Shown here piece by piece: positions 1 through 64,000 of a stretch of DNA of 64,000 bases (its first letter is position 1; each line of letters begins with the position of its first letter). A program made the translations under genes and the position numbers. The DNA is from Haliotis rufescens (taxonomy: Eukaryota): assembly GCF_023055435.1 (NCBI RefSeq), contig NW_025963779.1:70246001-70310000 (forward strand). The letters run 5' to 3'. Below the pieces are notes generated by a model. The model made no database searches and was not told the DNA's origin. It saw only the letters and a program-made list of their open reading frames with translations.

Positions 1-598
1 GCCACCTGCCCTCTCTCCCTTATCAGCAGATCCCAAATCTCCTGTCTACTTATCACATATATCTTGATAAACCAGTGTCAACAACTTGAAGCAAATTTCA
101 CCGTTGTTGGTCTTGTTAACCTGCCTTTTTCCTTAGTATCCACTTTTTCTCAATGACGGATTATGTCCGATTTTACAAATCAAAACAGATCGGGGGCGTG
201 TTTAACAAAACGCGGTCCTAAATAGAGAGTATTATTTTGACTCTCTGCTATACATTGATAATTAAAGCGCTAAGATCGCTTTGTGGGCCGTGGTTCTCAC
301 AGTCTCGCAAGAAGAAGTACGGACAAAATAACTAGACTGGCTTCTACCTGTTGTGTGTGTCTGATAAAGAAAGTAGGTCAGGTACTTGTTCGCCTTACCG
401 ATCAACTGTCGATCTCAACCAGTTCATGCCCTGTGCTATATCAAGAGAAGGGGTCAGCCGAAATACGTTATACTATTTCATCATTCCATTAGCGTTTATA
501 TATCACTCTCCGTGCAACACCGACTACTGATGATGTAGCTGTCTCTACCGCGACCGCTGCTTGTTTGAGGTCACAAGTGTACACCACACGTAACTATA

Positions 599-35474: not shown

Positions 35475-36905
35475 CACTGTGAACCTAGTGTATACACGAT
35501 CATGAAGTATAGGCGCTGTGTTCCTGGAGGAACGTTGTGTATAGAAGACTGTGAAGTATAGACGATGTGTTCCTGAAGGGACATCGTGTATACTGTGAAG
35601 TACAGTGATCCCTCGCTACAACCCTACTTTTGGGGTCAAAATAATTGATGAGCGTTATAGACGATCAGCGGTTTAACCGAGGTGGAGTTGTAGGTGGTTG
35701 TTGACCAACAAAACAGTACATGCTCTACCTACCTAACACGATCTACGCTGCATGGTTAAAAAAAGATTAGAAAAGTAGTTGTTTATGATTCACAGTGTAA
35801 AAAAAGATTTATTGAGTGTTATGCGTTTTAAAAAAACCAGGGGTATAACAAACTTGATCAATAAAAAAATGAAATTTGATATAAAACATCACTAGACATG
35901 ATGATTTACCATTTAAATTGTATTTCCTGCTCTCAAAGGCACAATAGCGAGGGAACACTGTATAGATGATGAGCTCCTAAAGGGATGTCGTGTATACAAG
36001 ACTGTGAAGTATAGACGATGTGTTCCTGAAGGGATGTCGTGTATACAAGACAGTGAAGTATAGCCGATGTGTTCCTAAAGGGATGTCGTGTATACAAGAC
36101 TGTGAAGTATAGACGATGTGTTCCTAAAGGGATGTCGTGTATACAAGACTGTGAAGTATAGCCGATGTGTTCCTAAAGGGATGTCGTGCATACAAGACTG
36201 TGAAGTATAGCCGATGTGTTCCTAAAGGGATGTCGTGTATACAAGACTGTGAAGTATAGACGATGTGTTCCTAAAGGGATGTCGTGTATACAAGACTGTG
36301 AAGTATAGACGATGTGTTCCTGAAGGGATGTCGTGCATACAAGACTGTGAAGTATAGACGATGTGTTCCTAAAGGGATGTCGTGTATACAAGACTGTGAA
36401 GTATAGCCGATGTGTTCCTAAAGGGATGTCGTGTATACAAGACTGTGAAGTATAGACGATGTGTTCCTGAAGGGATGTCGTGCATACAAGACAGTGAAGT
36501 ATAGCCGATGTGTTCCTAAAGGGATGTCGTGTATACAAGACTGTGAAGTATAGCCGATGTGTTCCTAAAGGGATGTCGTGCATACAAGACTGTGAAGTAT
36601 AGACGATGTGTTCCTGAAGGGATGTCGTGTATACAAGACTGTGAAGTATAGACGATGTGTTCCTGGAGGAACGTCGTGCATACAAGACAGTGAAGTATAG
36701 AGGATGAGCTCCTAAAGGGATGTCGTGTATACAAGACTGTGAAGTATAGACGATGTGTTCCTGGAGGAACGTCGTGCATACAAGACTGAAGTATAGACGA
36801 TGTGTTCCTAAAGGGATGTCGTGTATACAAGACTGTGAAGTATAGACGATGTGTTCCTGGAGGAACGTCGTGCATACAAGACAGTGAAGTACGGTTGTGT
36901 ACACT
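35475..36905 (+). repeat. 49-bp minisatellite (~21 copies) split by a MITE
   Basis: Unit GTATAGACGATGTGTTCCTAAAGGGATGTCGTGTATACAAGACTGTGAA. Confidence 0.93.
35603..35960. mobile_element. pogo/Tc1-type MITE, TA TSD
   Basis: TA|CAGTGATCCCTCGCTA ... TAGCGAGGGAACACTG|TA. Confidence 0.85.
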
Positions 36906-41100: not shown

Positions 41101-44100
41101 GGACAATACACCAACTGTGTGATCCGATACGTATCACGAAACCTTGCTCACGATCTGATACGTATCATGATACATATACTTGCATGTGCTCTGATCTGTG
41201 GTACGTAAGCCATCATTTTCATAGACAAGATGGCCAAATACCTGGCACACTAACAATTCACATTTGGCAGTGTCAAGTATTGCGCAATGGATGAAAATAT
41301 TTACGTTTTCACAACTCATTTTCACTAGTATTTACTGTCTAAGGTAACATTTATTAAAACCAATCTCGCAACCTCCCCAGCCTATAATAAATGACCAGCC
41401 CTTAATTGCACTGTACATGCTTATCGTCATCATCTTCATAGTTTATTATAGGAATAGTGAATGAATGTTGTCTAATGCTGCAGTTAGCAATATTCCGGCA
41501 GCATCATGGTGCCATCTAAATAAATCAAGAATGGCCTAGGCAAACCACTGACTGAAAGCATGAGCCACTATTCACACTATTGATAAAGTATCAACAAACT
41601 TACTACTTGTTCATCATAATTAAAATTTTCTATAAGAATTTTGAGGTGAAAGTTTAAGTTGCTATACTATGGACAAAAATTCATGAAAGGCTTACAAGAT
41701 CTGCAAAGTTTACTCTCCTAAAATACCCTTATCATCATCTGATTCTTCAAAATATTTGTACATCTGCCAGAACATCTATTTCTAATTTAACATTTTAACA
41801 TAACCACTTAAAACCACCATCTGTGTCACCATGGTGACTGCCTTTATCTTACAACACACATACTTTCTACAAACATGAATGTATAGAACAGATTTATCCA
41901 AAGTTTGAGACATGGAACTAAACTCATGCCACAGCCTTGTTCCCTCAGCTGGTAGTTATTCTCCCGCTACTCACCATAGCAACATTAGTAGGTGAGGCTC
42001 TATCACTGATTGAGAGGTTGCTCATACTGGAGGCCATGGTCGGGGTCAGCATATCACCGGGAGTCACAGGAGTACTGCCTGCACCCATTGACCCCACTGG
42101 AAACAACAGTCACAGTTCATACACATCCAAGCAGAGCTGGCCCTTTCTCCTTAAAGTGTCTGTATGTGTGTTGGTATGTATGTGTGTATGTTGTATATAA
42201 TCATGTGGTTGAAGGCTTGTAAAACAAGGAAAAGCATGGGGTACCATTGTTTGAAATTAAGCTTGATATTCAAGGGGTCCTTGTTATTGCACTAATGTCA
42301 TAATTTAAAGATTTAGCAGGTTCTAGATATAAAAAATTAGTACTATAGTAGCAAACATCAAGAACTCCAGGACCCCCCTTTAATTTCTAACACTATGGAA
42401 TTAAGGTCCTGATCTGCCTTAAGGCCTACATGGGCTTCTCCTAAGAGCATGTCGAGATCTGGCAAATAAACATTATCACAATGTACAATTTCCATCTATA
42501 GACAATAGGTAAACACCAAAGTATGTGATTAAACCATGAGATGCTGTGTGCCACTATGAACTGCTGTGTGCTGCTGTGTGCTACTTTGCGCTACTATGAG
42601 CTGCTGTGTGCTGCTGTGAGCTACTGTGTTAGTATGAGCTGCTGTGTTACTGTGAGCTGCTGTATGCTGCTGCGTGTTACTGTGACCTGCTGTTTTTCTT
42701 TGAGCTGATGTATGTTACTGTAAGCTGCTGTGTGTTACTGTGAACTGCTGTATGCTGCTGTGTGTTACTGTGAGCTGCTGTTTCTTTGAGCTGCTGTGTT
42801 AGTGTGTGCTGTTGTGTTACTGTATGCTGCTGTGTTTCTTTGAGCTGCTGTGTTACTGTGACCTGCTGTATGCTGCTGTGTGTTACTGTGAGTTGCTGTG
42901 TTTCTTTGAGCTGCTGTATGTTACTGTAAGCTGCTGCATGTTACTGTGAACTGCTGTATGCTGCTGCGTGTTACTGTGAGCTGCTGTATGCAGGTGCGTG
43001 TTACTGTGAGCTGCTGTGTGCTGCTGTGTGTTACTGTGAGCTGCTGTATGCTGCTGTGTTTCTTTGAGCTGCTGTGCTACTGTGAGCTGCTGTATGCTGC
43101 TGTGTTTCTTTGAGCTGCGGTGTTACTGTGAGCTGCTGTGTTACTGTGAGCTGCGGTGACTGTGAGCTGCTATATGCTGCTGTGTGTTACTGTGAGCTGC
43201 TGTGTTACTGTGAGCTGCTATATGCTGCTGTGTGTTACTGTGAGCTGCTGTTACTGTGAGCCTCTATATGATGCTGTGTGTTACTGTGAGCTGCTGTATG
43301 TTACTGTGAGCTGCTGTGTTACTGTGAGCTGCTGTTACTGTGAGCTGCTGTGTTACTGTGAGCTGCTGTATGCTGCTGTGTCACTGTGTGCTACTGTATG
43401 TTACTGTGAGCTGCTGTGTTACTGTGAGCTGCTATATGCTGCTGTGTGTTACTGTGAGCTGCTGTGTTACTGTGAGCTGCTGTGTTGCTGTGAGCTGCTA
43501 TATGCTGCTGTGTGTTACTGTGAGCTGCTATGTTACTGTGAGCTGCTGTGTTACTGTGAGCTGCTGTGTTACTGTGAGCTGCTGTATGCTGCTGTGTTAC
43601 TGTGTGCTACTGTGTGTTACTGTGAGCTGCTGTGTTACTGTTAGCTGCGGTATGTTACTGTGAGCTGCTGTATGCTGCTGTGTTTCTTTGAGCTGCTGTG
43701 TTACTGTGAGCTGCTATATGCTGCTGTGTTACTGTGTGCTACTGTGTGTTACTGTGAGCTGCTGTGCTACTGTGAGCTGCTGTGCTACTGTGAGCTGCTG
43801 TATGCTGCTGTGTTACTGTGAGCTGCTGTGAGATGCTGTGTTTCTTTGAGTTGCTGAGTTACTGTGAGCTGCTGTGTTTCTTTGAGCTGCTGTGTTACTG
43901 TGAGCTGCTGTGTTTCTTTGAGCTGCTGTGTTACTGTGAGATGCTGTATGCTGCTGTGTTTCTCTATGAGCTGTTGTGTGCTACTGTGAGCTGCTGTGTT
44001 TCTTTGAGTTGCTGTGTTACTGTGAGTTGCTGTGTTACTGTGAGCTGCTATGTTACTGTGAGCTGCTGTGTTACTGTGAGCTCCTGTGTGTTACTGTGAG

Positions 44101-47100
44101 CTGCTGTATGTTACTGTGAACTGCTGTGTTACTGTGAGCTGCTGTGTGTTAATGTGAGCTGCTGTGTTTCTTTGAGCTGCTGTATTACTGTGAGCTGTTG
44201 TGTGTTACTGTGAGCAGCTGTGTGTTACTGTGAGCTGCTGTATGTTACTGTGAGCTACTGTGTTACTGTGAGCTGCTGTGTGTTACTGTAAGCTGGTGTG
44301 ATTCTTTGAGTTGCTGTGTTACTGTGAGCTGCTGTGTAAGTGAGCTGCTGTGTGTTACTGTGAGCTGCTGTGATTCTTTGAGTTGCTGTGTTACTGTGAG
44401 CTGCTGTGTTACTGCGAGCTGCTGTGTGTTACTGTGAGCTGCTGTGATTCTTTGAGTTGCTGTGTTACTGTCAGCTGCTGTGTTTCTTTGAGCTGCTGTA
44501 TGCTGCTGTATGCTGCTGTGTTTCTCTATGAGCTGTTGTGTGCTACTGTGTGTTACTATGAGCTGCTGAGTGTTACTGTGAACTGCTCTGTTACTGTAAG
44601 CTGCTGTATGCTGCTGTAAGTTACTGTGAACTGCTGTATACTGCTGTAAGTTACTGTGAGCTGCTGTGTGCTACCGATCTATTCAGTGGTGTACTTACAA
44701 TCATCCAGATCAAGCAGTAGATCACCCTCCTTCTTGGAGGATGCTTTGTCTTCTTTAGTCTTTGATTTTTCTGGCTTGGTTTCCTGAAGACAAAGATCAT
44801 ACTTTCGACATGAAGACTACACTTGTATGATGTGTGACTGTGAGTGAGTGAATGGATACCGCTAGCTGTTCATATGCACATTTCAAGATGAAAATACTGA
44901 TGTATGTAGACACCTAATTAAGAAATAGATGACTTGTGGCCATTGTGTTTATGTACAATAAAACACTGCAGGGAGAATCAACCACAAGGGGCACAGCAAC
45001 ATTAAGTGAGTGATTGAGTGAGTGATTGAGTGAGTGAAAGAGTGAGTGAGTGAGTGAGTGTATGGTTTTACGCCGCTTTTAGCAATATTCCATATATCAC
45101 GTTGAGGGGTACCAGAAATAGGCTTCACATATTGTACCCATGTCGGGAATCGAACCCGGGTCTTCGGCGTGACGAGCGAACAATTTAACCACTAGGCTAA
45201 CCGACCACCCTATGCCTCTTTAAGGATGTTGATAAAATGTACAAGCTTTAAAAATATTAACCCAAATTTTAACAAGGATGACTCCCTAAATAGAATCTGA
45301 CCCAGAAATGTCGGACAAGTCCATTTTATGGACAGGTGGGTTAAGTTTGGTATTTCCCGCATATTCTCACAATCCTCACGTCGATTATCTGTACCTTTTC
45401 TCCTAGTGCCGATTGTCATATCTCCTAACACTTCCTGACAATATTTGACAGCACGGACCATGTAATTACACCAATATGTTCTGACCAAGCAGAGACAGAT
45501 AAACTTAGATGGTCAGTTGTTAGTTTCTACAAAGCTGTGCACCACACTGCAGAAGAAATGGCAAAGGTTCTGAAACCAAAGACTTACTATCGTTGTTGAA
45601 AAGTGCCGGGCTGCTTGATGGCTATTTACTGTAAGTAATTATGAGTGACACATTGCAGCCTACATCCTTGATGTGAGTGAGTGAGTGAGTGAGTATGGTT
45701 TTATGCTGCTTTTAGCAATATTCCAGCAATATCATTGCGGGGGACACCAGAAATGGGCTTCACACATTGTACCCAACATCCTTGATGTGAAATGGCCCAG
45801 ATGGGTGTGTGGCTGCTTGTCATGTCGTATAGTGTCATCCAATTACCGGTACGCCAAAACCAATGAGATAGATATGTTATCATTACACTGGTAGAGCTGA
45901 TCACTGACACAAGCACTGGATGTGCGTTACAAAGTGCAGTAGTTCCTGTTCAACTCGGGTAAGGACAAATGTAACCAAAGTCTAGGTGACCATTTATTTC
46001 CTCACCTCTACAAGTGTATGTCAGCCACCTATTTGAACAGTAAGAGCTAGTTCTCAAGCAGAGCTAGCCATTTCCGCTATCAATACACAAAACAATCGCA
46101 GCCATAGTTTCCTACTAATCTTAACAGTTCCTCAAACAGATACTGCTTTAAAATGTATCAATGCCTCAATGTAATGCAAGATGTCTGACATTTACTTACT
46201 GATCATATACTGCCTCATCACTAACCTTCTTAACTGGCTTTTTCTTGACAACAACCTCTTCCTCTGAAGACGATTCCTCCTCCTCACTGTCTTCCTCAGA
46301 GGAGTCCTCTTCTTTGCTGGAGTCCTCGTCCTCACTTTCCTCTTCTTCCTCCTCCTCCTCACTCTCCTCTTCCTCTTCTGACTCCTCCCCAGACTCTTCT
46401 TCCTCCTCCGCCTCCTCCGAGTCCTCTTCCTCACTCTCATCTGACCCGGATTCCGCATCGGAGTCATCTGAACACAAATCACATTTATCACAGGAATCTT
46501 CTGAAGGAATCTGTTATTACATTGATGGTAATTTACGGATAGAGTAAAACCTTTCAACTAAACGTTCTTGGGACCAGTGACAGTATATCAAGTTATGCAA
46601 TAGTTGGAGAAAAGATGACCAATCAGAAACATACATTCACGTCAAATCGAGTTTATGTAGTTCAAGTTTACCAGTATTGAATACATTTTGAAACCAAACA
46701 GTTGTATTTCTTTCAGCCCCAAATTCTGTGAACATCTGTGGAATATTTCAAAAAAGTGTATGTACATTCATGTATTGTATCAGTAGTTTAACATCTCAAC
46801 ATTGTACAACATGGCCTCCAGCAATGGAGTCTTGGTCTTGCATTTAGAAGTTGGAATAACATGAGTGAGTGAGTTGGGTTTAATGCCGTTTTTAACAGTA
46901 TTCCAGTTATATCACGGCGTGTCAGCTTAATGTTGGAGGAAAGCCCGAAGTGATGCAGGTCTCAGATGTTTACCACTTCGGTGAAACCCATGAGCACGGG
47001 TATGGTGCTGACAAACCTAGAAACATAATCGGGGTGAACAGGGATTCGAACCCACAATCATAGGTTTCTGGCGTGACCAAGGGACGCAACTCTGCACAGC

Positions 47101-50100
47101 GAATCGCGGCGCCTTAGACGACTGGGCCCCCTGTGCCCCCAGGAATAACATGAGAACCTGATTAGTTGTTTGTAAAGGCTTTTGGGGCTGCTTCTTCTAC
47201 ACTCATCATCAAGGGAATACTCAGTAAGTCCATGTTAAGTCAATATGCATACAGACTGATGTATGTACACACAGGGCGGGGTACAAAAGTCACAAGATAA
47301 CAGGGGAGCCAATGGAGGTAATGAGCAGGCTATTCCTTTTTCTACTTACACAAGACTGAAAAAATAAAATCATAATTTAAACGTCACAAATTATTTTAAA
47401 ATTATGTTATTGTTCAGAAGTGTAAATGTACTCTACTGGAAGTCAGAATATTTATTTTCTGTCTCAGTAAAGAAACATAATGCTGAAGGGAAAGAACTGA
47501 CCAGGAACCGAACACATAAAACTGTACTACACCACACCTCTTATCCATCCATATACTACCAGGGACGTATCTATATCTGCTCAGAGGCTGATATTTGGCC
47601 CCAAGTCTGCAGCCAATGGCAGGACAAATTCCCATGTTCCAATTCAAGCAGTTATAGTTACAACCAATCATAAGCAATGTTATGGCTATGTAGACGTGAC
47701 CTGTATTTCACTGATAACCGGACCAACAAAGAGGATGGAAAAAGACTTCAATGCTTAGTTTTACACTATGGCATTGAATGTAAAGTTAAATATTCCAGAA
47801 AATAAGAACTTTAACAAAAATCCAAAGTTTGAAAAAAAATGATGACTTATTTCCAGTCTGCCTGCCTGCAGTTAGTTTGGAAACTGAGATAAATCCCTGA
47901 TTATTGGTAACATAGAGTACAGCACAAATACCTTCATCACTAGATTCTGATTCGGAGTAGAATGACTTGAGGTCTGTAGCATTCTTCTTCTTCTTGGTAG
48001 ATGTTTTCTTCTCCGTCCAGATGGGCACCTCCACATTGCGGACAGATGGCTCCGGCGCCTCCTCCGGCCACTCAGGCAGCTCTTGGTACCCATGAGCACG
48101 CGTATTCAGCAGGTGAGACAGCGTGCCTAGCTGGTACTGGTCCCGATCTGGAGAACAATGAGTGAATGAGTGAGTGAGTGAGTGAGTGAGTGAGTGAGTG
48201 AGTGAGTGAGTGAGAGAGAGAGAGCAGACCCAGCCAGTACTGGTCCCGATCTGGGAAACAATGAGTGAACAGAACGGAACAGAACAGCTCTGCTGTTTAC
48301 ACTCAAGGCAATGGTTATTGCTGTTTACAAACAGAAAAAGTTGGAAGAATGAATTTTGATGATAAATAGAATTTCACCCTGGTGTTGGTAGAGTTAATAT
48401 ATTTGATATCAAGAGACATGAGGGTGAGATTCTCTATATTGTCAAATTGTTCTAAAGGAGTGATAGGAGATTTCATTTTCAGCAATTTCCATACATGAAC
48501 AATTTCTGTGTTTGACGCATATTGTTTGTTTTGTTTGTTGTTTAACACAGCACTCAGCAATATTCCAGCTACATAACAGCGGTCTGTACATAATCAAGTC
48601 TGGACCAGACAATCCAGTGATTGACACCATGAGCATCATTCCACACAATTGGGATACGATGACATGCATCAACTAAGTCAGCGAGCCTGACCACCCAATC
48701 CTGTTAGTCGCCTCTTACGACAAGCATGGGTTGCTGAAGACCAATTCTACCCCAGATCTTCACGGGTCTGACACATACTGATTGAGACTGATTGACAACT
48801 GTTACTGCTGGCACCTAAATGACAGAAACTATCCATGATCACTAAAATTCACAGCATACACACGACATAAGAACTTGTTGCTCAATCAACGCGTCACATC
48901 ACAAATAATCAACCAAAAGTGAGACTCACCTTGAAACTTGGAAGCAAGAACTGGAGCAGGTTTAGTCGCAAGGAAGATCTTTTTTGCATATTTGGCTAGT
49001 GCACTTGATTTCTCTCCAGGGAGCACAAGTTGTCGCAGGAAGCGAGATCGGTCACGAATGTCATAGTTCTGATCATACTTGGCCAGATTGAGCACGTACT
49101 GGCACAGGAGCTTGGTCTGCTTTTGGTTGGTGATGCACAGCTTGGCTGCTAGGTTCAGGATCTGCAGCTTCACGATATCCTCCTGTAACACAGGATATGA
49201 ACAAATACACAACATGCCCGAACCTGGCAATCTAGTTCCTACTCCTGTACCATAACCATTATTCAAGAGTAAGGCAATGCTTGTTTGTGTCAGTCACAGA
49301 TGTTCTAGGTACAGTTGGGCTGACTTCAAATACTTGAGTCTGGGCCATGCAAACCAGTGACTGATAGGGACCATCTATGCTTAATCCAGATGGTTCACTT
49401 CCCAGGAAATTAACAATGGATAACAAATGTTCAGGTAAAGAATCACTAATACGGAGTATGTTAATATGTCCATATCAAGATTGTTGGAAAGCATGGTGCC
49501 TGGAGTCAGCTGCGGTATCGGTATCTGCGCTGCTCCCTACAAACTACAGTAAACTACGTTTATAACAAACTCAAAGGGACCACAATTTTAGTTTGTTACA
49601 ACTGTAGTTTGTTATAATTATAAACATGTATACAGCATATATACAGCAAATGGACGGGACCAAAAAACAGTTCGTCATATCTGTCAGTTCATTGTAAGCG
49701 TGTTCGTTATTAACGTAGTTTACTGTATGTTAAACTTGACTTGTCGCTCTCAGAACTACGGGCTGTTCAATGTTTTCCTAATACATTCCCAGTCAGAACA
49801 TACTGTACTAACAACCTTGCCATAATGTACATGAATCATAACACCCCACGAAATGAGGTGAGGTGAGGTGAAATGGGGTTTAACGTCGCGTCCAAGATTA
49901 TTGCACTTATATAGCGACCCTCACGAAATGAAACATGGTTTCCTAAAAACACTTACCTTCAAGTATGTATACTTATATTTCGTTAAAGCAACTCTCTATG
50001 TTCATGTCACTTTGGAATCCGAGAGAGTACTCATTTTGCACCATACACCATAATACAAAACAGCAAAATCATCTTTACTGGTCCGGTTTCCAACTCAGTA

Positions 50101-53100
50101 AGTAACATGAGTAAACATATTGTTGCACAATCTAAACTTATAATACTCATATTTGAGGGAGTGAGTGATTGAGTGTGGTTTTACGCCGCTTTTAGCAATA
50201 TTCCATCAATATCACGGCGGGGGGGGGGGCACCAGAAATGGGCTTCACACATTGTACCCATTTCGGGACTCAAACCAGGGTCTTCGGGTCCATGTTGCTT
50301 TTGTCATTAGAGCTGAAGCATATTAAGTGCAATTACGATTTGGATTGGAGATCTATTGGGGAAACACTATGGGACAGCAAGTAGCTCTGTGTAGCAACAG
50401 GTCAAAATAGAAATCGTTTATAGGGTGCAGCACAGATAGGCTACTGCACCAAGGTGTCTGGACTAACAAGGTTTAATCATTGTACACCATAATCATCTTT
50501 ACGCCATGTTAGAGAATATCAAACAGAACATAATCATAGCTGGAATTTATCTAATAGTCATACGGGAGCTGTCAAAATATTTCTCTCAAATAATTTTACT
50601 ACTGCATGGTTCAACAGAGAAATATGATCAAAATGGCAATCTGACAGTAAAGTAAGTTCCACAATTGCAATTAATGAGTTTCTAAATATGTCCGCCATGC
50701 TATAAATGGATAAAAAATCAAAATATGCCGAAAACAAAATATATGTTATTCTGAGAACCACATACTTGCACTTCTCAATTTTCATAATGATACATTGCTG
50801 AAAATGAAATTTCCAATATTGTTCCCGTGGTGACCATGTGTGAACTTGGATCTGAATTCTGTGAGCAGTCTTTAGAAACACCATAGCAAAGATCATTCAT
50901 GTTTTTTCAAATCTGGTAAAAATATTGAAAGATGTACTATGAAAAGTTGATGACAGCAAGAAAATATCATTATGTCATTCGTCTCGTGCAAATTCACTGA
51001 AAGCACATGTCCTACCTCTTGAATGAAGCTTTTGGCAAACTTCCTCAGTACATCCGGGGCAATCTTGGGCACCCGCTCACTGTACTCGCCAATGAGCCAC
51101 AAGATGCTGGCTCGGGCCATGGGCACCATGATCTTCTCCACCATCTTAGCCATGTGACAAATGATGTCCTTGTGCTCCGATGGCTGAAAAATGTTGATAT
51201 TTTGCAAAACAAACAATTTTCCTGAAGAACATACAAATCTGTTTCTAGAATCATGTACAATCACACCAGAACCTCATTGTTTTTCTAACAACTGTGGAAT
51301 TCTGGCTTGAGCAAAATATGGTAAAATACAGTGTACATTGTAAGTCCAGTTAGTTTTGTATGTGGATCATTAAAAACTAAGCTAGGAGAATAAATTTTGG
51401 AACAGTGTCAAACACATGATACTGATATAATCCTAAGCTAAATGTGTAGTCCTAGTTTATGGTTTTGATTTGGTCAGTCAAACCATCTCACTAGTGTTTG
51501 CAAATTGATCACATAATCCGAGTACACATTCACAACAGTCCAACAAGCCAAGGGTTTACAAAATGTCTCACACAACTTTTAATCATGATCTTTATCTACA
51601 TAAATATCTGACAGTAACACTACTTTATCTCTGTTGCCATCATTAAATTGAGTGAATTTTGTTTAACCCTGCATTCATCAATACATGTATTAGTCACATC
51701 AAAGCCTACATGACAACCCCTTCTAATTTTCTCTGCACCATCTCCGTAGTCTAGCGCATAATGGCAGGTTAGTGGTTCAATCCCTGGCCGCTCATACCAA
51801 CAGATGTTAAAGATAATACTTGTCTTTACCCTGCCTGTGTTCACCATTCAGAGACTAAAACAAGGACTGTTCGTCTCGGAGTCTGATGTGCCTGAGTGTA
51901 GTGTACCATGTCAAACAGCAGCATCTGTCCAGACAAATACAAGCAGACACACGCACGCACGCACGCACGCACGCACGCGCGCATGCACGTCGCTGTGTAA
52001 GTGCAACAGTTTTGAGCGTGACGTTCAACCCCATTTCACCTCACCCACCACCTCTAATCTGCTCTTACAACAAATGTAAGATACTGAGGGCATTCTCTGC
52101 CCCCGACAGGTATGAATAACTTCACCTGATGAAGGAGTAAGCATATACTCAGAAACGTTGTGTTCATTCACCTGATGAAAGATGGCATATACTCCGAAAT
52201 GTGGTGGTCATTCACCTAATGGAGGAGTAAGCATTAATACTCCGAAACATTGTGGTCATTCACCTGATGAAGGAGTAAGCATATACTCCTAAACGTTAGT
52301 TCATTTACCTGATGAAGGAGTAAGCATATACTCCAAAAAGCTGTGTTCATTCACCTGATGAAAGATGGCATATACTCCGAAACGTTGGTTCATTCACCTG
52401 ATGAAGGAGTAAGCATATACTCCGAAACGTGGTGGTCATTCACCTGATGAAGGAATAAGCATATACTCTGAAACGCTGTGTTCATTCACCTGATGAAGGA
52501 GTAACCATATACTCCGAAAAGCTGTGTTCATTCACCTGATGAAAGATGGTATATACTCCGAAACGTTGGTTCATTCACCTGATGAAGGAGTAAGCATATA
52601 CTCCGAAACGTTGTGGTCATTCACCTTATGAAGGAGTAAGCATATACTCCGAAACGTTGGTTCATTCACCAGATGAAGGAGTAAGCATATACTCCGAAAC
52701 ATTGTGTTCATTCACCTGATGAAGGAGTAAGCATATACTCCGAAACATTGGTTCATTCACCTGATGAAGGAGTAAGCATATACTCTGAAACGTTGTGTTC
52801 ATTCACCTGATGAAGGAGTAAGCATATACTCCGAAATGTTGTGTTCATTCACCTGATGAAAGATGGCATATACTCCGAAACGTGGTGGTCACTCACCTGA
52901 TGAAGGAGTAAGCATATACTCCGAAACGTTGGTTCATTCACTTGATGAAAGATGGCATATACTCCGAAACGTGGTGGTCATTCACCTGATGAAGGAGTAA
53001 GCATATACTCCGAAACATTGTGTTCCTCATAATAAAGAAGCTGATATCCATAAATTCTCTTCCTTATGTGAATCACTTCTAACTGCCTTTCAAAGACCTT

Positions 53101-56100
53101 CAGCTATGACAATTCACACAATCCATCAGCGAGTCAGTAAGTGCACTAGACTTTCAACAGTATCTCAACTCATAGAGGGCTTCCCCAACCTGGTCCCCAT
53201 ATTGTGCCTACTTGTGGGCATTGAAATTAACATCAGGTGAGAAACTGGCACATTGTCTGAGTAATTAGAGTCATGATTTAACTGCTAAATTGAGATACAG
53301 TAAACTACGGTTATAACAAACAGAAAACTACGGTTACAACAAAGAGGGACGGCTACTTTTAGTGTGTTATAATCGAAGTTCGTTATAAGCTTATACACAC
53401 CATATATACAGCAAATAGGCAGGACCCAAAAACAGTTTGTTATATCATCAGTTCATTATAAACGTAGTTTACTGTACATCATAAATTTAAACTAGGAGAC
53501 AAAAAAGTGGCGTTAGAGGATTGGTTGGTTTGTTGTTTAACGCCGCACTCAGCAATATTCCAGCTATATGATGGCGGTCTGTAAATAATCGAGTCTGGAC
53601 CACACAATCCAGTGATTGATATCATGAGTAGTGATCCACGCAGTTGGGATACGATGACATGCATATCGCCTTTTACGGCAAGCATGGGTTGCTGAAGACC
53701 TAATCTACCCGGATCTGTTAATCAGCTTGTGAATAACTCTTTAATATTAACATGAAAACATGAAAGTCCAAAGGGACACAAGCTGTAAACGTCTACCACT
53801 TTGGTAAAACCCATGAGCACAGGTAAGGATCTGACCCATAAGGATCATAATCAGGGTGAAACTGGGATTCAAACCCAAGATCAGCGGATCCTGGCATTAC
53901 AAAGTGATGTAACTCTCTCCATAGCACCTTGTCACAGAGCTTTCTCTCGGGCATCTACATTATGTAATCCCCCCATGGATGAGTGAGTGAGTATGGTTTT
54001 ACGCCGCTTTTAGCAATATTCCAGCAATATCACGGCGGGGGACACCAGAAATGGGCTTCACACATTGTACCCATGTCGGGAATCGAACCCGGGTCTTCGG
54101 CGTGACGAGCGAACGCTTTAACCACTAGGCTACCCGACCGCCCCCCCCCCCCCATTGGATGAATTGGTACTGTAATGTAACTCTTATATCATATCACACA
54201 CAATACACATCTTTAACACTGAACCCACTTGTGGAAATTGTAACACAATGAACAAGGCCCTCAGATCTAATGAAAAATAGAAATTGTTCGGATCACATAA
54301 ACATGATAAACTCAAGCATCTGATTTCATCATGTCACTCTGACCTCAAGTGGTATTTCAAATATGCAGTGTGCAGAGAATGAAATAACAACAGAAACTGA
54401 GTTAATTCTGCAAACATGCTGTTGCCATTCCCAGCATGGCAAAGTCTAAACAAAAGGAGCTAAACAAAATGTCTAAACAAATTCTTTGACATGCTGCACC
54501 TACTAATAACTTTTAACTAAAAAATACGATCTAATTCAAGTTCTCAGTATTTCCTGTATTTGAATTACTGATAAAAAATTGATGCAATCCAACGATGAAG
54601 ATGCTGAAGGTAATAAAATATTCCTTGAAACTTTTCAAACACCTTTCCACACATTTGCCGAAGCTGTGCAAACTACGTCTACAAGATGTGCAACCGATCC
54701 CACTACCCATTAGAAACAACTTCTCCACCATGTTCACAACCCATCAAGCATTATGCATATTCAAGTTCAGTATCAAACAAGAGAATGAGAAAAGCGTTTG
54801 CCAGCATCTCAGCAAGAGGTTCTAAATATGGAGGTAATTTCAATTTGTACATATCATGATNNNNNNNNNNNNNNNNNNNNNNNNNNNNNNNNNNNNNNNN
54901 NNNNNNNNNNNNNNNNNNNNNNNNNNNNNNNNNNNNNNNNNNNNNNNNNNNNNNNNNNNNNNNNNNNNNNNNNNNNNNNNNNNNNNNNNNNNNNNNNNNN
55001 NNNNNNNNNNNNNNNNNNNNNNNNNNNNNNNNNNNNNNNNNNNNNNNNNNNNNNNNNNNNNNNNNNNNNNNNNNNNNNNGTTCATACTAGTATGTAACCA
55101 AAACAAACAGTTGAAAGCAAATACACAATGTATACAATCAACCTGGGAAAGGGCCTCCCTACATAAATGTATTCGACTACCGTTGGACTTGGAATATTAA
55201 AGGATTTTATTGGGGGTTTTTCAAAATGGAAATAAAAACGAAACATGCAGCAAACTTTATGATGAGGCGGGCGGTGCCTGAGAACCAAGTCTATTAATTT
55301 TTTTTAGCCTAATATTCTGAAAATACAATTTTGTTTCTGTACAGATCTAAAAGATTTTGACAGGCAATGTGGCAAGAAAAGAAGAGCCTTGGGAGGTCAG
55401 GGGAGGGGCAGGGACAGGGAGGGGAGGGGAGGGGAGGGGAGGGGAGGGGATAGGGTTGGTGTGACTAACATGTTGGTAAAATAAAAATGTGGCGTTATGT
55501 AACAGTGTGTAAGGGAGAAGTGCATTATACTTTGACAACTGTATGTATCATTTTGGTTATCCGGGCAGCAAAACAGACAATTCCAGAGATCAGTGATGTC
55601 CTTTACAACAGTTTTCAGGAAAATGTAACTTCCTTGCCTCAAAGCATTGAAAGGAAGAAATATATTATTTAAATTGGAATAATTTGTTAAGTTTGGATGA
55701 CTGGCAAACGATGTAAAATGAGAGATAGGATGACACATAATGACAGATCCAGCAACAAGATGGGAGATGATGACAAAGGAAAGCCTCAGCCCATATTAGA
55801 TACCCTTTTTTTCTCGCTTGAAGTAGGCTAGAAAGGAAATAACATATTTATGACAGGATGTGCAATATGTACTGCTTAGAAAATGAATTGAGACAGTGCA
55901 GTAGACTTGTTAATGCATGGTTAACTGATAAAAGTAATTCATGTGAAAATTTCATTAAAAAAAGAAATACTTTGTAACTATGGTAACAATGACATGCAAA
56001 GAGCAGAGTGACTCCTTTTAGTAGATTATACAAATGTTGGTAAACTGTCTGTTGGATATGAAGATAACATGTGACAGTGGTATAAAAACTGCTCTGCAAG

Positions 56101-59100
56101 ATGAAATCACTAATTAATCACCAACAAGAACAGTCAGTACTTCACCATCATCATAAGAATCAGAATAATCATAACTACAGGTTTGCAACAGAGAGAGCAA
56201 ACATATAATACCACAGTAGTATTGTATTGGAGTAAAAGATCAGGATGCCGTTGTACAAAGCGATCTTAGCGCTTAGGTGATCGTAACTCCCATACCTTAA
56301 CATAGACTTACGACTGTCGTAGTGTTAAGGTTGTTTTGTACAACAGCACCCTGATCTTAATGAGACTGAACACTACCCATGGCTGTAGCTCACCATAATT
56401 GTGAAATCAATGGAGAGTTGGCTGGGTGTTTACCACCCTAGATCCAAGCCATCCTCTCTTCTCAGTATATTTGTGATTTGTTTCATTCAAGTAATGTTTG
56501 AAATAACCAATGAAGGAAATGAACAATAAAACGCTTCCTCCACACTCTTATGGAACGTTGAGGATTACTTATTCATACCAGCTTTAAGGCAGCATAAAGC
56601 AAACGACACTACTGTCAGTCTTTGTCAGGAGAAACAAAAGCATTTACATGGGCTCCTATTTCTTAAATATTTTTTTGTATCACATCTGTCCCCAATCTGA
56701 CTAATGTTACCCCTTAAAAGACGCTTTCCTTCTTCAACGAAACTGTCCCAACTCTTATTTTCACAACACAAAAGTTGTTTTTAACTTCATCACTTCATCT
56801 GTTTCTAATTACTTTTATAATTTACAGTTACCTTGTCATTACAAACAGTTCTAAATTTATGACTTTCTTCTCTTGCACACTCCTACGCTGTTGATAGAGA
56901 TTGGACATCATGTCAGATAATGGGACCATGATGGCTTCATAACAATACAGGAGATTAGACTACAGATGATGTAATGCCCCTAACATTCAAATAGTTCCTC
57001 ATCTCAACCATACATACAGTGTTAAATATACCAACATTTGACATACCGAAGTGTCCTGTAGCACTGTCGTGTAGAGTCCTGTAAGGAGTGAGTGTAATGT
57101 GTTACAGTGTACTGATGGTGTACTGTGCTGTGATGGTGTACTGTGCTGTGATGGTGTACTATGCTGTGATGGTGTAATGCGCTTTGATGGTGTGTGTACT
57201 GTGCTGTGATGGTGTGTGTACTGTGCTGTGATGGTGTGTTTACTGTGCTGTGATGGTGTGTTTACTGTGCTGTGATGGTGTACTGTGCTGTGATGGTCTA
57301 CTGTGCTGTGATGGTGTACTGTGCTGTGATGGTGTACTGTGCTGTGATGGTCTACTGTGCTGTGATGGTGTACTGTGCTGTGATGGTGTAAGATGTGGTT
57401 GACAGTGACACTGTGAGAGAGCTTCCTTTTTGACGTGGCTGACTGTGACACTGTGAGAGAGTGTTCTGTAAGATGTGGCTGACAGTGACACTGTGAGAAA
57501 GTGACCTGTAAGATGTAGCTGACAGTGACACTGTGAGAGAGTGTCCTGTAAGATGTGACTGACAGTGACACTGTGAGAGAGTGTTCTGTAAGATGTGGCT
57601 GACAGTGACACTGTGAGAGAGTGTCCTGTAAGATGTGGCTGACAGTGACACTGTGAGAGAGTGTTCTGTAAGATGTGGCTGACAGTGACACTGTGAGAGA
57701 GTGTTCTGTAAGATGTGGCTGACAGTGACACTGCGAGAGAGCTTCCAGTAAGACATGGCTGACAGTGACACTGTGAGACTGTGAGAGAGTGTCCTGTAAG
57801 ATGTGGCTGACAGTGACACTGTGAGAGAGTGTTCTGTAAGATGTGGCTGACAGTGACACTGTGAGAGAGTGTTCTGTAAGATGTGGCTGACAGTGACACT
57901 GCGAGAGAGCTTCCAGTAAGACGTGGCTGACTGTGACACTGTGAGACTGTGAGAGAGTGTCCTGTAAGATGTGGCTGACTGTGACACTGTGAGAGAGTGT
58001 TCTGTAAGATGTGGCTGACAGTGACACTGTGAGAGAGTGTCCTGTAAGATGTGGCTGACAGTGACACTGTGAGAGAGTGTTCTGTAAGATGTGGCTGACA
58101 GTGACACTGTGAGAGAGTGTTCTGTAAGATGTGGCTGACAGTGACACTGCGAGAGAGCTTCCAGTAAGACATGGCTGACAGTGACACTGTGAGACTGTGA
58201 GAGAGTGTCCTGTAAGATGTGGCTGACAGTGACACTGTGAGAGAGTGTTCTGTAAGATGTGGCTGACAGTGACACTGTGAGAGAGTGACCTGTAAGATGT
58301 GGCTGACAGTGACACTGTGAGAGAGTGTCCTGTAAGATGTGACTGACAGTGACACTGTGAGAGAGTGTTCTGTAAGATGTGGCTGACAGTGACACTGTGA
58401 GAGAGTGTCCGGTAAGATGTGGCTGACAGTGACACTGTGAGAGAGTGTTCTGTAAGATGTGGCTGACAGTGACACTGTGAGAGAGTGTTCTGTAAGATGT
58501 GGCTGACAGTGACACTGCGAGAGAGCTTCCAGTAAGACATGGCTGACAGTGACACTGTGAGAGAGTGTTCTGTAAGATGTGGCTGACAGTGACACTGTGA
58601 GAGAGTGTCCTGTAAGATGTGACTGACAGTGACACTGTGAGACTGTGAGAGAGTGTCCTGTAAGATGTGGCTGACTGTGACACTGTGAGAGAGTGTCCTG
58701 TAAGATGTGGCTGTTAGTGACACTGTGAGACTGTGAGAGAGTGTCCTGTAAGATGTGGCTGACAGTGACACTGTGAGAGAGTGACCTGTAAGATGTGACT
58801 GACAGTGACACTGTGAGAGAGTGTTCTGTAAGATGTGGCTGACAGTGACACTGCGAGAGAGCTTCCAGTAAGACGTGGCTGACAGTGACACTGTGAGACT
58901 GTGAGAGAATGTCCTGTAAGATGTGACTGACAGTGACACTGTGAGACTGTGAGAGAATGTCCTGTAAGATGTGACTGACAGTGACACTGTGAGACTGTGA
59001 GAGAATGTCCTGTAAGATGTGACTGACAGTGACACTGTGAGACTGTGAGAGAATGTCCTGTAAGATGTGACTGACAGTGACACTGCGAGAGAGCTTCCAG

Positions 59101-62100
59101 TAAGACGTGGCTGACAGTGACACTGTGAGACTGTGAGAGAATGTCCTGTAAGATGTGACTGACAGTGACACTGCGAGAGAGCTTCCAGTAAGACGTGGCT
59201 GACAGTGACACTGTGAGACTGTGAGAGAGTGTCCTGTAAGATGTGGCTGACAGTGACACTGTGAGAGAGTGTCCTGTAAGATGTGGCTGACAGTGACACT
59301 GTGAGACTGTGAGAGAGTGTCCTGTAAGATGTGGCTGACAGTGACACTGTGAGAGACATAACCCATGACATTAGTTAAAGAGTGGGCTATGCCCATCACT
59401 CACCCGCATTTGAAGGAGCTTCTTGATAACCACCACACTTTCAGCCACAACACTTTCTGCAACATTTGAATATTTATGGCTTATTAATCTGGCAATTAAA
59501 CATTTCACATTTCTCAAGAACATAAATAATTAATATTGTTCCAAAAGTTAGGGTAGGTATATCTGTAATACAAGAAGAGATTAAATTAAAGAATACAAAC
59601 ACTTCCGAATTGAGTAATTAGTTGCAGCCGATAGAAGACATAATTACAATATAACAAGGCATTGATGTCTTACCATCCCTGTTGGACATGAGATGCACGA
59701 GACCATTGAGACACGTATCAGTGATCTCGGAAATGTTGCTGGCACATCGTCCAATGGCCTGAATTGTAGCAGCTGCAAATTCCTTGTCAGGGCTTAACAC
59801 ATATGTCTGTGGAGAGATGGCACTAGGATTAGGGGGCACAACTATTACAACAGCATTGTGACAGTTTAATAAATACATTAATTACCCATAGGGTTAGAAA
59901 TAACCGAGTTCACAAATATTGTATGTACACTAGCGCAAATATACATTTTTTCATGCCCCAGTGTATTGTTTCAGTCATCTGAAAGGCACTGTCAATGTCA
60001 TTCGAATCTAACGTAAGGTCGGAATGACATCACATGAAATGATGTCATAGCTGAAGATCGTTGATGTCATTTGACAAATTGAAGTATTCTTGGACAGCAG
60101 TGAGGATCAGTGCATTTTTCAAAATGGGAGCTCAAAAGGATAAGAAATAATGGGTAAATAAACAATTTTTCACACTCACATGTGTGTCATACTGATTTTA
60201 CGAAACTTGTGTAAGAATTCATGTATTACTTCTCTCACGCTCGGGAAATACAAGAATTCTGACACTCATTTCGTAAAATCAGCATGACACACCTGCTCGT
60301 ATAGTAATCTCTATGTTCTGTCCTGTAACTCAGATTCCCTTGCAGTATACCACATGATGACAAACCCTAACATGCCTACCAGGATCTGGATTTAGCAGAT
60401 TACTTTGGAAGTTGTCAGGGAGTAAGTGAAGCACTCCTCATTCTTGTCTGAACATATAAACTTAGTCCAAAGTGTCTCATGTGGGATCAATATTGCATCC
60501 AAGCAAATGGAAGCACGAATGATCATAATGCTTTTTAATCTTTTATCCTATCGATACCATTGATGTACAATGTGATGTTTAGGCCATGGAAAATTGTGAT
60601 GCATCGACAGTTCAATCAGTTGATACACCCCTATATATGATGCATTGACAGTTCAATCAATTGATACACCTCTATATATGATGCATCAACAGTTCAATCA
60701 ATCGATACACCCCTATATATGATGCATTGACAGTTCAATCGATTGATACACCCCTATATATGATGCATTGACAGTTCAATCAATTGATACACCTCTATAT
60801 ATGATGCATCAACAGTTCAATCAATTGATACACCCCTATATATGATGCATTGACAGTTCAATCAATTGATACACCCCTATATATGATGCATTGACAGTTC
60901 AATCAATCGATACACCTCTCTATATGATGCATCAACAGTTCAATCCGTCGATACACCTATCTATATGATGCACTGATAGTTCAATCAGTCGATACACCCC
61001 TATATATGATGCATTGACAGTTCAATCAATCGATACACCTCTCTATATGATGCATTGACAGTTCAATCAATCGATACACCTCTATATGTGATGCATTAAC
61101 AGTTCAATCAATAGATACACCCCTATATATGATGCATTGACAGTTCAATCAATTGATACACCCCTATATATGATGCATTGACAGTTCAATCAGTTGATAC
61201 ACCTCTCTATATGATGCATTGACAGTTCAATCAATCGATACACCTCTATATATGATGCATTGACAGTTCAATCAATAGATACACCCCTATATATGATGCA
61301 TTGACAGTTCAATCAATCGATACACATCTATATATGATGCATTGACAGTTCAATCAATCGATACACCTCTCTATATGATGCATTAAAAGTTCAATCAATG
61401 GATACACCCCTATATATGATGCATTGACAGTTCAATCAGTTGATACGCCTCTATACATGATGTATTGACAGTTCAATCAGTTGATACGCCTCTATACATG
61501 ATGCATTGACAGTTCAATCAGTTGATACGCCTCTATACATGATGCATAGACAGTTCAATCAATTGATACACCCCTATATATGATGCATTGACAGTTCAAT
61601 CAATTGATACACCCCTATATATGATGCATTGACAGTTCAATCAGTTAATTCGCCTCTATACATGATGCATTGACAGTTCAATCAGTTGATACGCCTCTAT
61701 ACATGATGCGTAGAGAGTTCAATCAGTTGATACACACCTATATATGATGCATAGACAGTTCAATCAATTGATACACCCCTATATATGATGCATTGACAGT
61801 TCAATCAGTTGATACGCCTCTTTACATGATGCATTGACAGTTCAATCAGTTGATACGCCTCTATACATGATGCATTGACAGTTCAATCAGTTGATACGCC
61901 TCTATACATGATGCGTAGAGAGTTCAATCAGTTGATACACCCCTATATATGATGCATAGACAGTTCAATCAATTGATACACCCCTATATATGATGCATTG
62001 ACAGTTCAATCAGTTGATACGCCTCTATACATGATGCATTGACAGTTCAATCAGTTGATACGCCTCTATACATGATGCGTAGACAGTTCAGTCAGTTGAT

Positions 62101-63569: not shown

Positions 63570-63777
63570 CAAGTCTATAAAAGCCATTAGAAGTTATACA
63601 CAAAAGGAAGAGAATTTATGGATGTCAACTTCTTTATTATGAGGAACACAACATTTCGGCGTATCTACTTACTCCTTCATCAGGAACAGATAATTCACCT
63701 GATGAAGGAGTAAGTAGATACTCAGAAATATTGTGTTTCACATAATAAAGAAGTAGCCATCCATAAATTCTCTTCCT
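63570..63777. mobile_element. Head-to-head inverted pair of Penelope-like pLTR/hammerhead motifs
   Basis: Arms 63605-63684 and 63698-63777 with a 13-nt spacer; each has CTGATGAAGGAGTAAGTAGATAC...GAAA..TTGTG then ATAATAAAGAAG...ATCCATAAATTCTCTTCCT, same tail as 53026-53064. Confidence 0.8.
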
Positions 63778-64000
63778 CATCAATCTTTTAGTTGTGTCTA
63801 TCAGAAAGATGATAGTAATGTTAAACAGAACTTATTTATTGAATATCACTCGTGATACAACAATTTAAGGTACAGCAATTGTGGACAAGCATATTCCTTG
63901 GCCAGATCAGGATCCGCAACAATAGTCCTTGCCAAACTGCGCAATAGCTAAGATATCATAAGGACTAGTACAAAATTTGCCCTTTTTAAGGGTTTTGCTA

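What the first reader, a model, noticed from the sequence alone, without database searches (positions are those of the whole stretch)
52121..53025. Minisatellite whose ~46-nt unit is a hammerhead ribozyme (20 tandem copies); adjacent units can complete each other
Seen: each unit has CAC-CUGAUGA-(extra A)-GGAGUA[AGCAUA]UACUCC-GAAACGUU-GUG. Known: minimal type I hammerheads of Penelope-like elements have a loop-less palindromic stem III and are thought to work as dimers. Inference: head-to-tail repetition supplies the partner in cis. AACGU-U^GUG of unit n, the GUG-UUCAUU-CAC hairpin (stem I) and CUGAUGA/stem II/GAA-ACGUU of unit n+1 form a type III-like fold with up to 5 bp in stem III (e.g. 52788-52840). 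A transcript could be cut into ~46-nt multiples, potentially circularisable. Known hammerhead satellites and retrozymes (newt, schistosome, cave cricket) have units of one to several hundred nt, whereas here the unit is essentially only the ribozyme. The array is antisense to the AP3B pre-mRNA, so it would not cut the host transcript. Many units carry inactivating changes.
Basis: partly seen in the sequence, partly recalled or inferred. Interest (0 to 1): 0.9.

Follow-up and report, generated by a model that had tools for sequence, protein, structure and literature searches.

The report
Decayed hammerhead-derived minisatellite in an intron
A 20-copy, 46-base tandem repeat in an AP-3 beta intron was built from the small hammerhead ribozyme motif at the end of a very abundant Penelope-type retroelement, but almost every copy is broken, so it looks like ordinary repeat DNA rather than a working ribozyme array.

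Summary
Window 52121-53025 is a 46-nt x 20 array, and the unit has the anatomy of the Penelope-like-element (PLE) minimal hammerhead: CUGAUGA, a bulged A, a 6-bp helix II, GAAA, palindromic ACGU and a GUU site.

The functional reading is weak:
- Only 2 of 20 units pass a full minimal-hammerhead descriptor.
- At that junction, folding favours a competing helix that sequesters the catalytic core.
- Core positions have mutated at least as often as other positions.

The array is the amplified 5' end of a 5'-truncated copy of a dispersed element with at least 5,000 copies in this genome. Dozens of other loci carry arrays cut from the same region. Each has different unit boundaries (31-89 nt), and many lack essential hammerhead parts, so amplification does not need ribozyme activity. 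The window is 14.6% minisatellite.

Unit junctions show 1-6 nt microhomology and the arrays have higher-order periodicity. Both point to slippage or unequal exchange. PLE-terminus-derived hammerhead tandem repeats down to 51 bp are already described.

First-stage readers of this scan noted related hammerhead/PLE features elsewhere in this genome.

The parts
52121..53025 (+). Minisatellite of 20 units of ~46 nt (43-48). The unit is reference positions -5..+43 of the parent element, i.e. the PLE-type minimal hammerhead plus 6 nt past the cleavage site.
   Evidence: TRF; unit split; unit alignment; mapping to a natural solo copy
52576..52621 (+). Unit 11, one of only two units that pass the full minimal-hammerhead descriptor. 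The next unit has G5->U, so this junction is dead.
52758..52803 (+). Unit 15, the second descriptor-positive unit (G10.1-U11.1 wobble at the base of helix II).
52789..52840 (+). The only complete type III-like hammerhead across a unit junction (15->16). The predicted cut lies between 52794 and 52795.
   Evidence: 1 of 19 junctions complete; active fold -8.6 vs MFE -11.0 kcal/mol
53026..53099 (+). Unamplified 3' tail of the same 5'-truncated parent copy, ending ...TTTCAAAGACCT, the fixed 3' end of the family.
   Evidence: Alignment to natural copy L049; genome hits cover query positions 1-81/95 at 92-96%
51950..51989 (.). (CACG)n microsatellite ~130 nt upstream of the insertion. The stretch 51990-52058 between them is a different dispersed repeat.
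63596..63684 (-). Left arm of a head-to-head pair of the same element family (a diverged solo hammerhead copy).
63696..63779 (+). Right arm of the head-to-head pair, beginning at CACCUGAUGA.
48886..51264 (-). Host adaptin (AP-3 beta-like) coding pieces on the minus strand. The array lies in the intron upstream of them, in gene sense.
   Evidence: Pfam Adaptin_N, E 6e-11 and 1.8e-13

Best explanation
The array is a neutral, decaying minisatellite. A Penelope-type retroelement fragment inserted in this intron, 5'-truncated about 5 nt upstream of its minimal hammerhead and about 122 nt long. Its first ~46 nt were duplicated in tandem at a TTC microhomology. The native sequence reads GCA-TTC-ATTCAC upstream of the motif and GTG-TTC-CTC downstream of the cleavage site. 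The duplicate then grew by replication slippage or unequal exchange, including duplication of 4- and 6-unit blocks.

The ribozyme motif is a passenger. It is amplified because it sits at the end of an element present in thousands of copies, in a genome that turns any sequence into 20-90-nt minisatellites. If the + strand were transcribed, at most one site (52794|52795) could self-cleave, and probably poorly.

Shown here: the anatomy, the origin from the dispersed element, the uniqueness of the junction, the decay of the motif, and amplification of sister arrays without a competent motif. Inferred: the DNA-level mechanism and the lack of function.
For: 1. Parent element.
- The native 32-mer spanning the helix II 3' arm, GAAACGUU and the native downstream sequence occurs 5,009 times (control 0).
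- The native upstream-context 28-mer occurs 1,734 times.
- Solo copies share a fixed 3' end and variable 5' truncation, and often have an inverted head-to-head partner. This is the published PLE insertion pattern (PMC8557442).

2. The window copy.
- The right flank 53022-53099 aligns to the native tail.
- The left flank shows no similarity above shuffles.

3. Mobility. The unit-to-unit junction 23-mer is found only inside this array, so the unit was not mobilised as such.

4. Sister arrays.
- Fifteen other arrays that were fetched have periods of 33-89 nt with different boundaries. Eight have simple junctions with 1-6 nt microhomology. Others contain fillers, internal deletions or inverted pieces.
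- About 17 distinct arrays are visible in four contigs alone, including 31- and 34-nt units.

5. Ribozyme independence. Eight of the 16 arrays have none or only one CUGANGA box, and five more keep the box but have no unit passing the full descriptor with helix I.

6. Decay in the window array.
- 2/20 units and 1/19 junctions are competent.
- There are about 0.75 distinct changes per core column versus about 0.5 per non-core column (read).

7. Higher-order periods of 181 and 272, with the stem-II-broken variant recurring every fourth unit (units 2, 6, 10).

8. Genome context. There are 9 minisatellites covering 14.6% of the 64-kb window.

9. Literature. Local amplification of PLE termini into tandem repeats by duplication plus unequal crossover is proposed in preprint 10.64898/2026.07.22.740005.
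Against: - No read data could be obtained, so transcription, cleavage and copy-number accuracy are untested.
- The rough null expects about 0.5% of copies to be amplified, given one array per ~7 kb. About 2% are seen (roughly 100 arrays extrapolated per ~5,000 copies), so a few-fold local hotspot is not excluded.
- The region is rich in short palindromes (helix II arms, ACGT, TGATGA/TCATCA). Several units contain strand-switch pieces, and 10-11 of 16 arrays sit at the centre of an inverted pair. This is also compatible with an origin during integration.
- Secondary-structure energies ignore tertiary contacts and protein chaperones. Published PLE hammerheads can need protein to cleave (PMC11167929).
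Confidence: 0.75

Rival explanations
1. The arrays are born during retrotransposition. The PLE reverse transcriptase, a relative of telomerase RT, or the repair of the 5' junction switches template repeatedly at the structured hammerhead end of the RNA. This lays down several tandem (and sometimes inverted) copies of the terminal 30-90 nt at insertion, and later DNA-level exchange only reshapes them.
For: - Every array examined abuts the 5' end of a truncated copy or the centre of a head-to-head pair.
- Units in L032, L035 and L039 include inverted pieces of the same region.
- Junction microhomologies are 1-6 nt.
- PLE protein extends both target strands in vitro, which explains the head-to-head pairs (PMC11167929).
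Against: - The clustering of unit boundaries at the hammerhead is largely an ascertainment effect of searching with hammerhead-containing queries.
- Head-to-head partners are about as common among the few solo copies sampled.
- Higher-order periodicity shows post-insertion growth.
- The arm-versus-unit identity comparison was uninformative because only 23-52 sites were available.
- The same window holds eight unrelated minisatellites.
Confidence: 0.13
2. The array is a working ultra-small retrozyme-like locus. The + strand transcripts self-cleave through adjacent units, giving ~46-nt multiples or circles that are biologically used or reverse-transcribed by rolling circle.
For: - The geometry is right: helix III of 5 bp forms between neighbouring units with probability about 0.8.
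- Dimeric and trimeric constructs of a schistosome minimal hammerhead cleave weakly in vitro (PMC4209133).
- Hammerhead tandem repeats are expressed as circular RNAs in several animals (PMC7229834).
Against: - Only 1/19 junctions and 2/20 units are competent.
- Helix I is 3 bp with probability 0.15, and the core is sequestered by a competing helix.
- There is no purifying selection on the core.
- The junction is unique to this locus.
- Sister arrays lack essential parts.
- No Rfam hammerhead model matches at E<=10, although the models also miss intact solo copies.
Confidence: 0.07
3. The copy number is an assembly artefact, i.e. a short repeat over-expanded or mis-joined.
For: Tandem repeats are error-prone in assemblies, and no reads could be laid on the region.
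Against: - All 20 units differ from one another in an ordered higher-order pattern.
- Both flanks are consistent with a single truncated insertion.
- Many comparable arrays exist on other large contigs.
Confidence: 0.03

Closest known systems
Minimal hammerhead ribozymes (min-HHR) of Penelope-like elements (Cervera & de la Pena 2014, PMC4209133; Lunse, Weinberg & Breaker 2017, cited through PMC6765202)
   Same: - CUGAUGA box, an unpaired base 5' of helix II, a long helix II (6 bp) and a very short helix I.
- No helix III, but a palindromic ACGU that can pair with a second copy, and a GUU cleavage triplet.
- Location at the terminus of a dispersed, 5'-truncated, often head-to-head retroelement.
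   Different: - Here the motif is repeated head-to-tail every 46 nt instead of once per pseudo-LTR.
- Most copies are mutated.
- The link of the parent element to an RT/GIY-YIG ORF was not shown, only a lead.
Animal non-LTR retrozymes and hammerhead satellites (newt satellite 2, Schistosoma Sm-alpha, coral, mussel and axolotl repeats; PMC7229834; preprint 10.64898/2026.07.22.740005)
   Same: - Tandem repeats carrying a type I hammerhead in each unit and derived from PLE termini.
- The dimer model for cleavage.
- The preprint proposes local amplification of a PLE terminal sequence followed by unequal crossover.
   Different: - Published units are 150-450 nt (51-972 bp in the preprint). Here they are 46 nt, and 31-89 nt at sister loci.
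- Each locus has its own junction, so there is no evidence of mobilisation.
- Most units lack a competent ribozyme.
- No circular RNA evidence.
Transposable-element-derived minisatellites and satellites in general
   Same: An internal or terminal piece of a dispersed element is duplicated at a short microhomology and expanded, with higher-order periodicity and unit decay.
   Different: The seed happens to be a ribozyme motif, and the same ~35-nt core was seeded independently at dozens of loci.

Membership tests
PLE minimal hammerhead (min-HHR) | Core box C3-U4-G5-A6-N7-G8-A9 | tested here: met
   Intact in 16 of 20 units. Broken in units 3, 12, 13 and 19.
PLE minimal hammerhead (min-HHR) | Unpaired base 5' of a long helix II (6-8 bp) | tested here: met
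   The bulged A is present in all units. Helix II has 6 bp in 13 units, 5 bp in 2, and is broken (3 bp) in the five variant units 2, 6, 10, 17 and 19. A sister family in L045 keeps the helix with different letters on both strands (GGGGC/GCCCU).
PLE minimal hammerhead (min-HHR) | G12-A13-A14, then A15.1...U16.1 around a palindromic segment with no helix III, and N17 not G | tested here: inconclusive
   GAA is present in 18/20 units and ACGU+U in 8/20. N17 is G in 4 units. The segment is ACAU, AUGU, AAGC or ACGC in the rest. The consensus meets the feature but most units do not.
PLE minimal hammerhead (min-HHR) | All features together in one unit | tested here: inconclusive
   Only 2 of 20 units (11 and 15) pass the full descriptor. 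The family assignment holds for the ancestral unit, not for the array as it stands.
PLE minimal hammerhead (min-HHR) | Resides in the terminal repeat of an element encoding RT plus GIY-YIG endonuclease | tested here: inconclusive
   The parent is a dispersed element with at least 5,000 copies and PLE-like insertion anatomy. Twelve GIY-YIG loci had no hammerhead within 1.5 kb. One longer copy (L069) has an upstream decayed ORF with a YRKVDDTF motif. That ORF has no Pfam hit, and the Atlas feature search points to HTH_animal/RVT_1 clusters, which is a lead only.
PLE minimal hammerhead (min-HHR) | Self-cleavage after N17, as a dimer | not testable with these tools
   Needs in vitro transcription or RNA end mapping.
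Rfam hammerhead families (types I, II, III, HH9, HH10) | Covariance-model match | tested here: not met
   No hammerhead hit at gathering threshold on the window or at E<=10 on 52050-53100. The models also miss intact native solo copies in L049 and L066, so the negative says little.
Type III hammerhead topology across unit junctions | Closed helix I and helix II, an open helix III of at least 4 bp, an intact core and N17 not G | tested here: inconclusive
   Met at 1 of 19 junctions (15->16). There the active fold is 2.4 kcal/mol above the MFE and helix I has pairing probability 0.15.
Non-LTR retrozyme | A type I hammerhead in every tandem unit (the preprint's definition of an active retrozyme) | tested here: not met
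   2/20 units are competent.
Non-LTR retrozyme | The same unit present at several loci, i.e. mobilised | tested here: not met
   The junction 23-mer occurs only in this array. The six other hits (2 mismatches each) are isolated single sites, read as native upstream context rather than unit junctions. Sister arrays have different periods and junctions.
Non-LTR retrozyme | Expressed as linear and circular monomer RNA | not testable with these tools

The most novel reading that the evidence does not exclude
The hammerhead end of this Penelope-type element is a genuine hotspot for minisatellite birth. Its nested palindromes (helix II arms, ACGT, TGATGA/TCATCA), sitting at the meeting point of two cDNAs primed from both target strands, would provoke repeated template switching by the telomerase-related PLE reverse transcriptase or by the replication fork. 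A ribozyme motif would then seed roughly 100 independent arrays of 31-89 nt in one genome. A minority of these arrays (for example L037 and L033, which retain many intact cores) might still be transcribed and processed into very small RNAs.
Probability: 0.12. Interest if true: 0.6.

Novelty: new member of a known kind. Interest (0 to 1): 0.3.

Why it matters
If the ordinary reading is right, the value is cautionary. A tandem repeat whose unit reads as a hammerhead is not thereby a retrozyme or a ribozyme array.

In this genome, dozens of arrays were cut from the same retroelement end with different boundaries, and many lack essential ribozyme parts. Amplification therefore does not depend on catalysis. 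That bears on surveys that count hammerhead tandem repeats as active retrozymes.

The locus also offers a clean set of independent minisatellite births from one known ancestral sequence. Such a set is useful for studying junction microhomology, strand switching and higher-order growth.

Units of 31-49 nt extend the published size range (51 bp and up) downward.

Tried and rejected
No expression, RNA-end or copy-number evidence exists.
Solo copies were obtained instead as loci of the genome search.
It was redone by reading TRF output files. over-extended the alignments and is superseded.
- My by-eye impression that the left flank 52059-52122 is diverged upstream element sequence was rejected: alignment score 18 versus shuffles with mean 16 and maximum 27.
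- The comparison of inverted-arm identity with unit identity, meant to date array birth relative to insertion, was uninformative because only 23-52 sites were available.
- Twelve GIY-YIG loci were scanned for the hammerhead family and none was found within 1.5 kb. The autonomous partner therefore remains unidentified, and those loci may belong to other PLE clades.
- The apparent clustering of unit left boundaries at the hammerhead 5' edge, and the frequency of head-to-head arms, were considered as evidence for a junction-specific mechanism. I set this aside because all queries contained the hammerhead (ascertainment) and solo copies show similar arms.
- The paper of Lunse et al. (PMC5785218) is not held and is cited only through a review.
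Full report
**1. What is there**

Tandem Repeats Finder reports one array at window 52121-53025. It has period 46, 20.0 copies and 86% matches, and it is also described by higher-order periods of 181 and 272 nt. Splitting at the CACCTGATGA start gives 20 units of 43-48 nt. The 34-nt core matches 14 times at up to 3 mismatches, against none in 100 shuffles.

The consensus unit reads CAC / CUGAUGA / A / GGAGUA-AGCAUA-UACUCC / GAA / ACGU / U | GUG / UUCAUU.

No Rfam hammerhead model matches, either at gathering threshold on the window or at E<=10 on 52050-53100. Intact native solo copies are missed too, so this negative only shows that the models do not cover minimal variants.

The host gene is an adaptin on the minus strand (Adaptin_N hits for 48886-49266 and 50893-51264). 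The array is intronic, and its hammerhead sense is antisense to the host transcript.

**2. How competent the units are**

A descriptor was applied that requires CUGANGA, a perfect helix II of at least 4 bp, GAAA, A-(palindrome)-U, N17 not G, and a 3-bp helix I. Two units pass it, units 11 and 15.

The failures are of several kinds:
- Core substitutions: G5->A/U, U4->A, C3->U, A9->G, G12->U/A.
- N17 = G in four units.
- A one-base deletion in helix I in six units.
- Loss of the ACGU palindrome.
- A variant with a broken helix II in five units.

Counting distinct changes in the unit alignment gives about 9 in the 12 core and cleavage-site columns and about 17 in the other 34 columns. The core is not protected.

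At the single complete junction, nearest-neighbour folding puts the active fold at -8.6 kcal/mol against an MFE of -11.0. Helix II is certain and helix III is likely (probability ~0.8). Helix I has probability 0.15, because UUCAUU pairs with GAUGAA of the catalytic box (probability 0.55-0.8). Such energies ignore tertiary contacts and proteins, so they are suggestive only.

**3. Where the unit comes from**

The genome (1.33 Gb) holds the native context many times:
- The 32-mer running from the helix II 3' arm through GAAACGUU into GTGTTCCTCATAATAAAG occurs 5,009 times at up to 3 mismatches (control 0).
- The 28-mer with native upstream sequence GCATTCATTCAC occurs 1,734 times.

Aligned solo copies show a fixed 3' end (...TTTCAAAGAC(C/T)T, 117 nt after the CAC), variable 5' truncation, and frequently an inverted 5'-truncated partner head-to-head (another pair lies in the window at 63596-63684 / 63696-63779). 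That is the described PLE insertion pattern, with the hammerhead near the 3' end (PMC8557442).

In the window, the right flank 53022-53099 is the native tail. The left flank is unrelated to native upstream sequence. The insertion was therefore a ~122-nt fragment truncated about 5 nt before the motif.

Mapping the unit on a natural copy gives reference positions -6..43 for a 46-nt period. This means a 3-nt overlap: native GCA-TTC-ATTCAC upstream and GTG-TTC-CTC downstream share TTC. The 'helix I hairpin' is this duplication junction.

I could not tie the parent to an RT/endonuclease ORF:
- Twelve GIY-YIG loci carry no hammerhead within 1.5 kb.
- A longer copy (L069) has an upstream decayed ORF with a YRKVDDTF motif. 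It has no Pfam hit, but Atlas neighbours carry HTH_animal/RVT_1.

**4. The array is one of many, and the others argue against a ribozyme-driven origin**

A search with five units found arrays on many contigs. Fifteen were fetched, with these results:
- Their periods are 33, 41, 43, 44, 44, 44, 45, 47, 49, 55, 55, 61, 84, 87 and 89 nt, with 3-80 copies each.
- Every array has its own boundaries. All share only about reference positions 18-30, and 15 of 16 share positions 7-34.
- Eight arrays have simple one-piece units with 1-6 nt of junction overlap. Others have fillers, an internal deletion (L038) or inverted pieces (L032, L035, L039).
- Eight of the 16 arrays (counting the window array) have none or one CUGANGA box. 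Five more keep the box but have no unit that passes the full descriptor with helix I.

A genome-wide pattern of two helix-II 5' anchors spaced 18-80 nt apart gives 556 pairs. In four contigs alone these resolve into about 17 different arrays. They include 31-nt and 34-nt units that cannot be hammerheads (C1:74087945-74089164, C1:84842882-84843164, C2:3958277-3958423).

The window's own junction 23-mer is found nowhere else as a junction. The arrays are therefore independent local amplifications, not copies of a mobile 46-nt element, and they do not require catalysis.

**5. Is the hammerhead a hotspot?**

The window holds nine minisatellites (period 15-200, at least 3 copies) covering 14.6% of 64 kb. 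The flanks of the fetched loci are full of unrelated ones, and other first-stage notes describe further arrays in the same gene.

With about one array per 7 kb and units of about 45 nt, roughly 0.5% of any given short site should have been caught in a unit. About 100 arrays (extrapolated) for about 5,000 copies is about 2%. This is the same order of magnitude. A few-fold excess is possible but cannot be established with these numbers.

Ten or eleven of the 16 arrays sit between an inverted arm and the direct arm, and unit left ends cluster at the hammerhead. Both features are expected from hammerhead-based ascertainment and from the high base rate of head-to-head pairs. A test comparing arm identity with unit identity had too few sites.

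**6. Comparison with what is known**

- The dimer-in-tandem fold is drawn in Fig. 1A of Cervera & de la Pena 2014, and dimeric and trimeric constructs cleaved weakly.
- Animal hammerhead tandem repeats ('non-LTR retrozymes') have units of 150-450 nt and give circular RNAs (PMC7229834).
- A 2026 preprint finds vertebrate families of 51-972 bp derived from PLE pseudo-LTRs. It proposes local amplification of a PLE terminus by duplication and unequal crossover.

The present array fits that picture at the extreme small end. It fails the retrozyme criteria that could be tested: a hammerhead in every unit, and the same unit at several loci.

**7. Verdict**

The structural reading of the consensus unit is right, but the concept is not new. 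The functional proposal is unlikely. The best explanation (0.75) is a neutral, decaying minisatellite seeded at a microhomology in a truncated PLE-type fragment.

The rivals are:
- Birth during integration by template switching (0.13).
- A working ribozyme or retrozyme array (0.07).
- An assembly artefact (0.03).

Noticed in passing
window 6104-6324, 14032-14866, 16028-16262, 35960-36891, 42592-44674, 46323-46432, 57113-59356, 60597-62350: Eight further minisatellites (periods 18-53 nt) besides the hammerhead array. Together the nine arrays cover 14.6% of the window. The 790-aa and 719-aa 'ORFs' at 56999-59399 are read-throughs of one of them.
   Followed up: partly
window 54068-54139 (-): tRNA-like sequence scoring 30.1 bits, just above the Rfam tRNA gathering score of 29, with several non-standard pairs. 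It may be a tRNA-derived SINE head or a pseudogene. Weak tRNA-like hits also occur in L049 and L066.
   Followed up: no
window about 54860-55090: A run of N (448 in the window), seen as X-runs in the ORFs at 54798-55200.
   Followed up: no
native element, e.g. L049:1497-1520, and every array unit: The native upstream UUCAUU is complementary to GAUGAA of the catalytic box. This 6-bp helix, with a 5-nt loop, would sequester G5-A9. It may be an inactive conformer built into the parent element.
   Followed up: partly
G000 C1:13882167, 13884157, 13886231 (+): Three perfect copies of the native hammerhead context are spaced about 2.0 kb apart on one strand. This could be a tandem of longer elements and a route to the full-length parent.
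   Followed up: no
L069:549-1250 (+), about 300 nt upstream of the 3'-terminal repeat that elsewhere carries the hammerhead: A 233-aa ORF with a YRKVDDTF motif, 85% identical at DNA level to L072 over about 800 nt. It has no Pfam hit. Atlas feature neighbours carry HTH_animal and sometimes RVT_1. It is probably a decayed retroelement ORF.
   Followed up: partly
G000, 44 GIY-YIG (PF01541) matches, loci L053-L064: Many GIY-YIG endonuclease matches, some in open frames of 300-460 aa, with no minimal hammerhead within 1.5 kb. They may belong to hammerhead-less PLE clades or to other elements.
   Followed up: partly
L031 (G000 C46:29659500-29665500), locus positions 1439-1764 and 2302-2450: Arrays of 148 and 74 nt lie next to the 49-nt hammerhead array. 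Their units contain the downstream tail of the same element without the hammerhead core, so other parts of the element amplify too.
   Followed up: partly
L045 (G000 C1:56605000-56611000), locus positions 2703-3433: A 44-nt array from a different hammerhead subfamily. Its helix II reads GGGGC/GCCCU instead of GGAGUA/UACUCC, i.e. changes on both strands that keep the pairing.
   Followed up: partly
window 51990-52058: The stretch between the (CACG)n microsatellite and the insertion belongs to another dispersed repeat, with 431 first-look candidates and 83-92% identity over about 60 nt.
   Followed up: no
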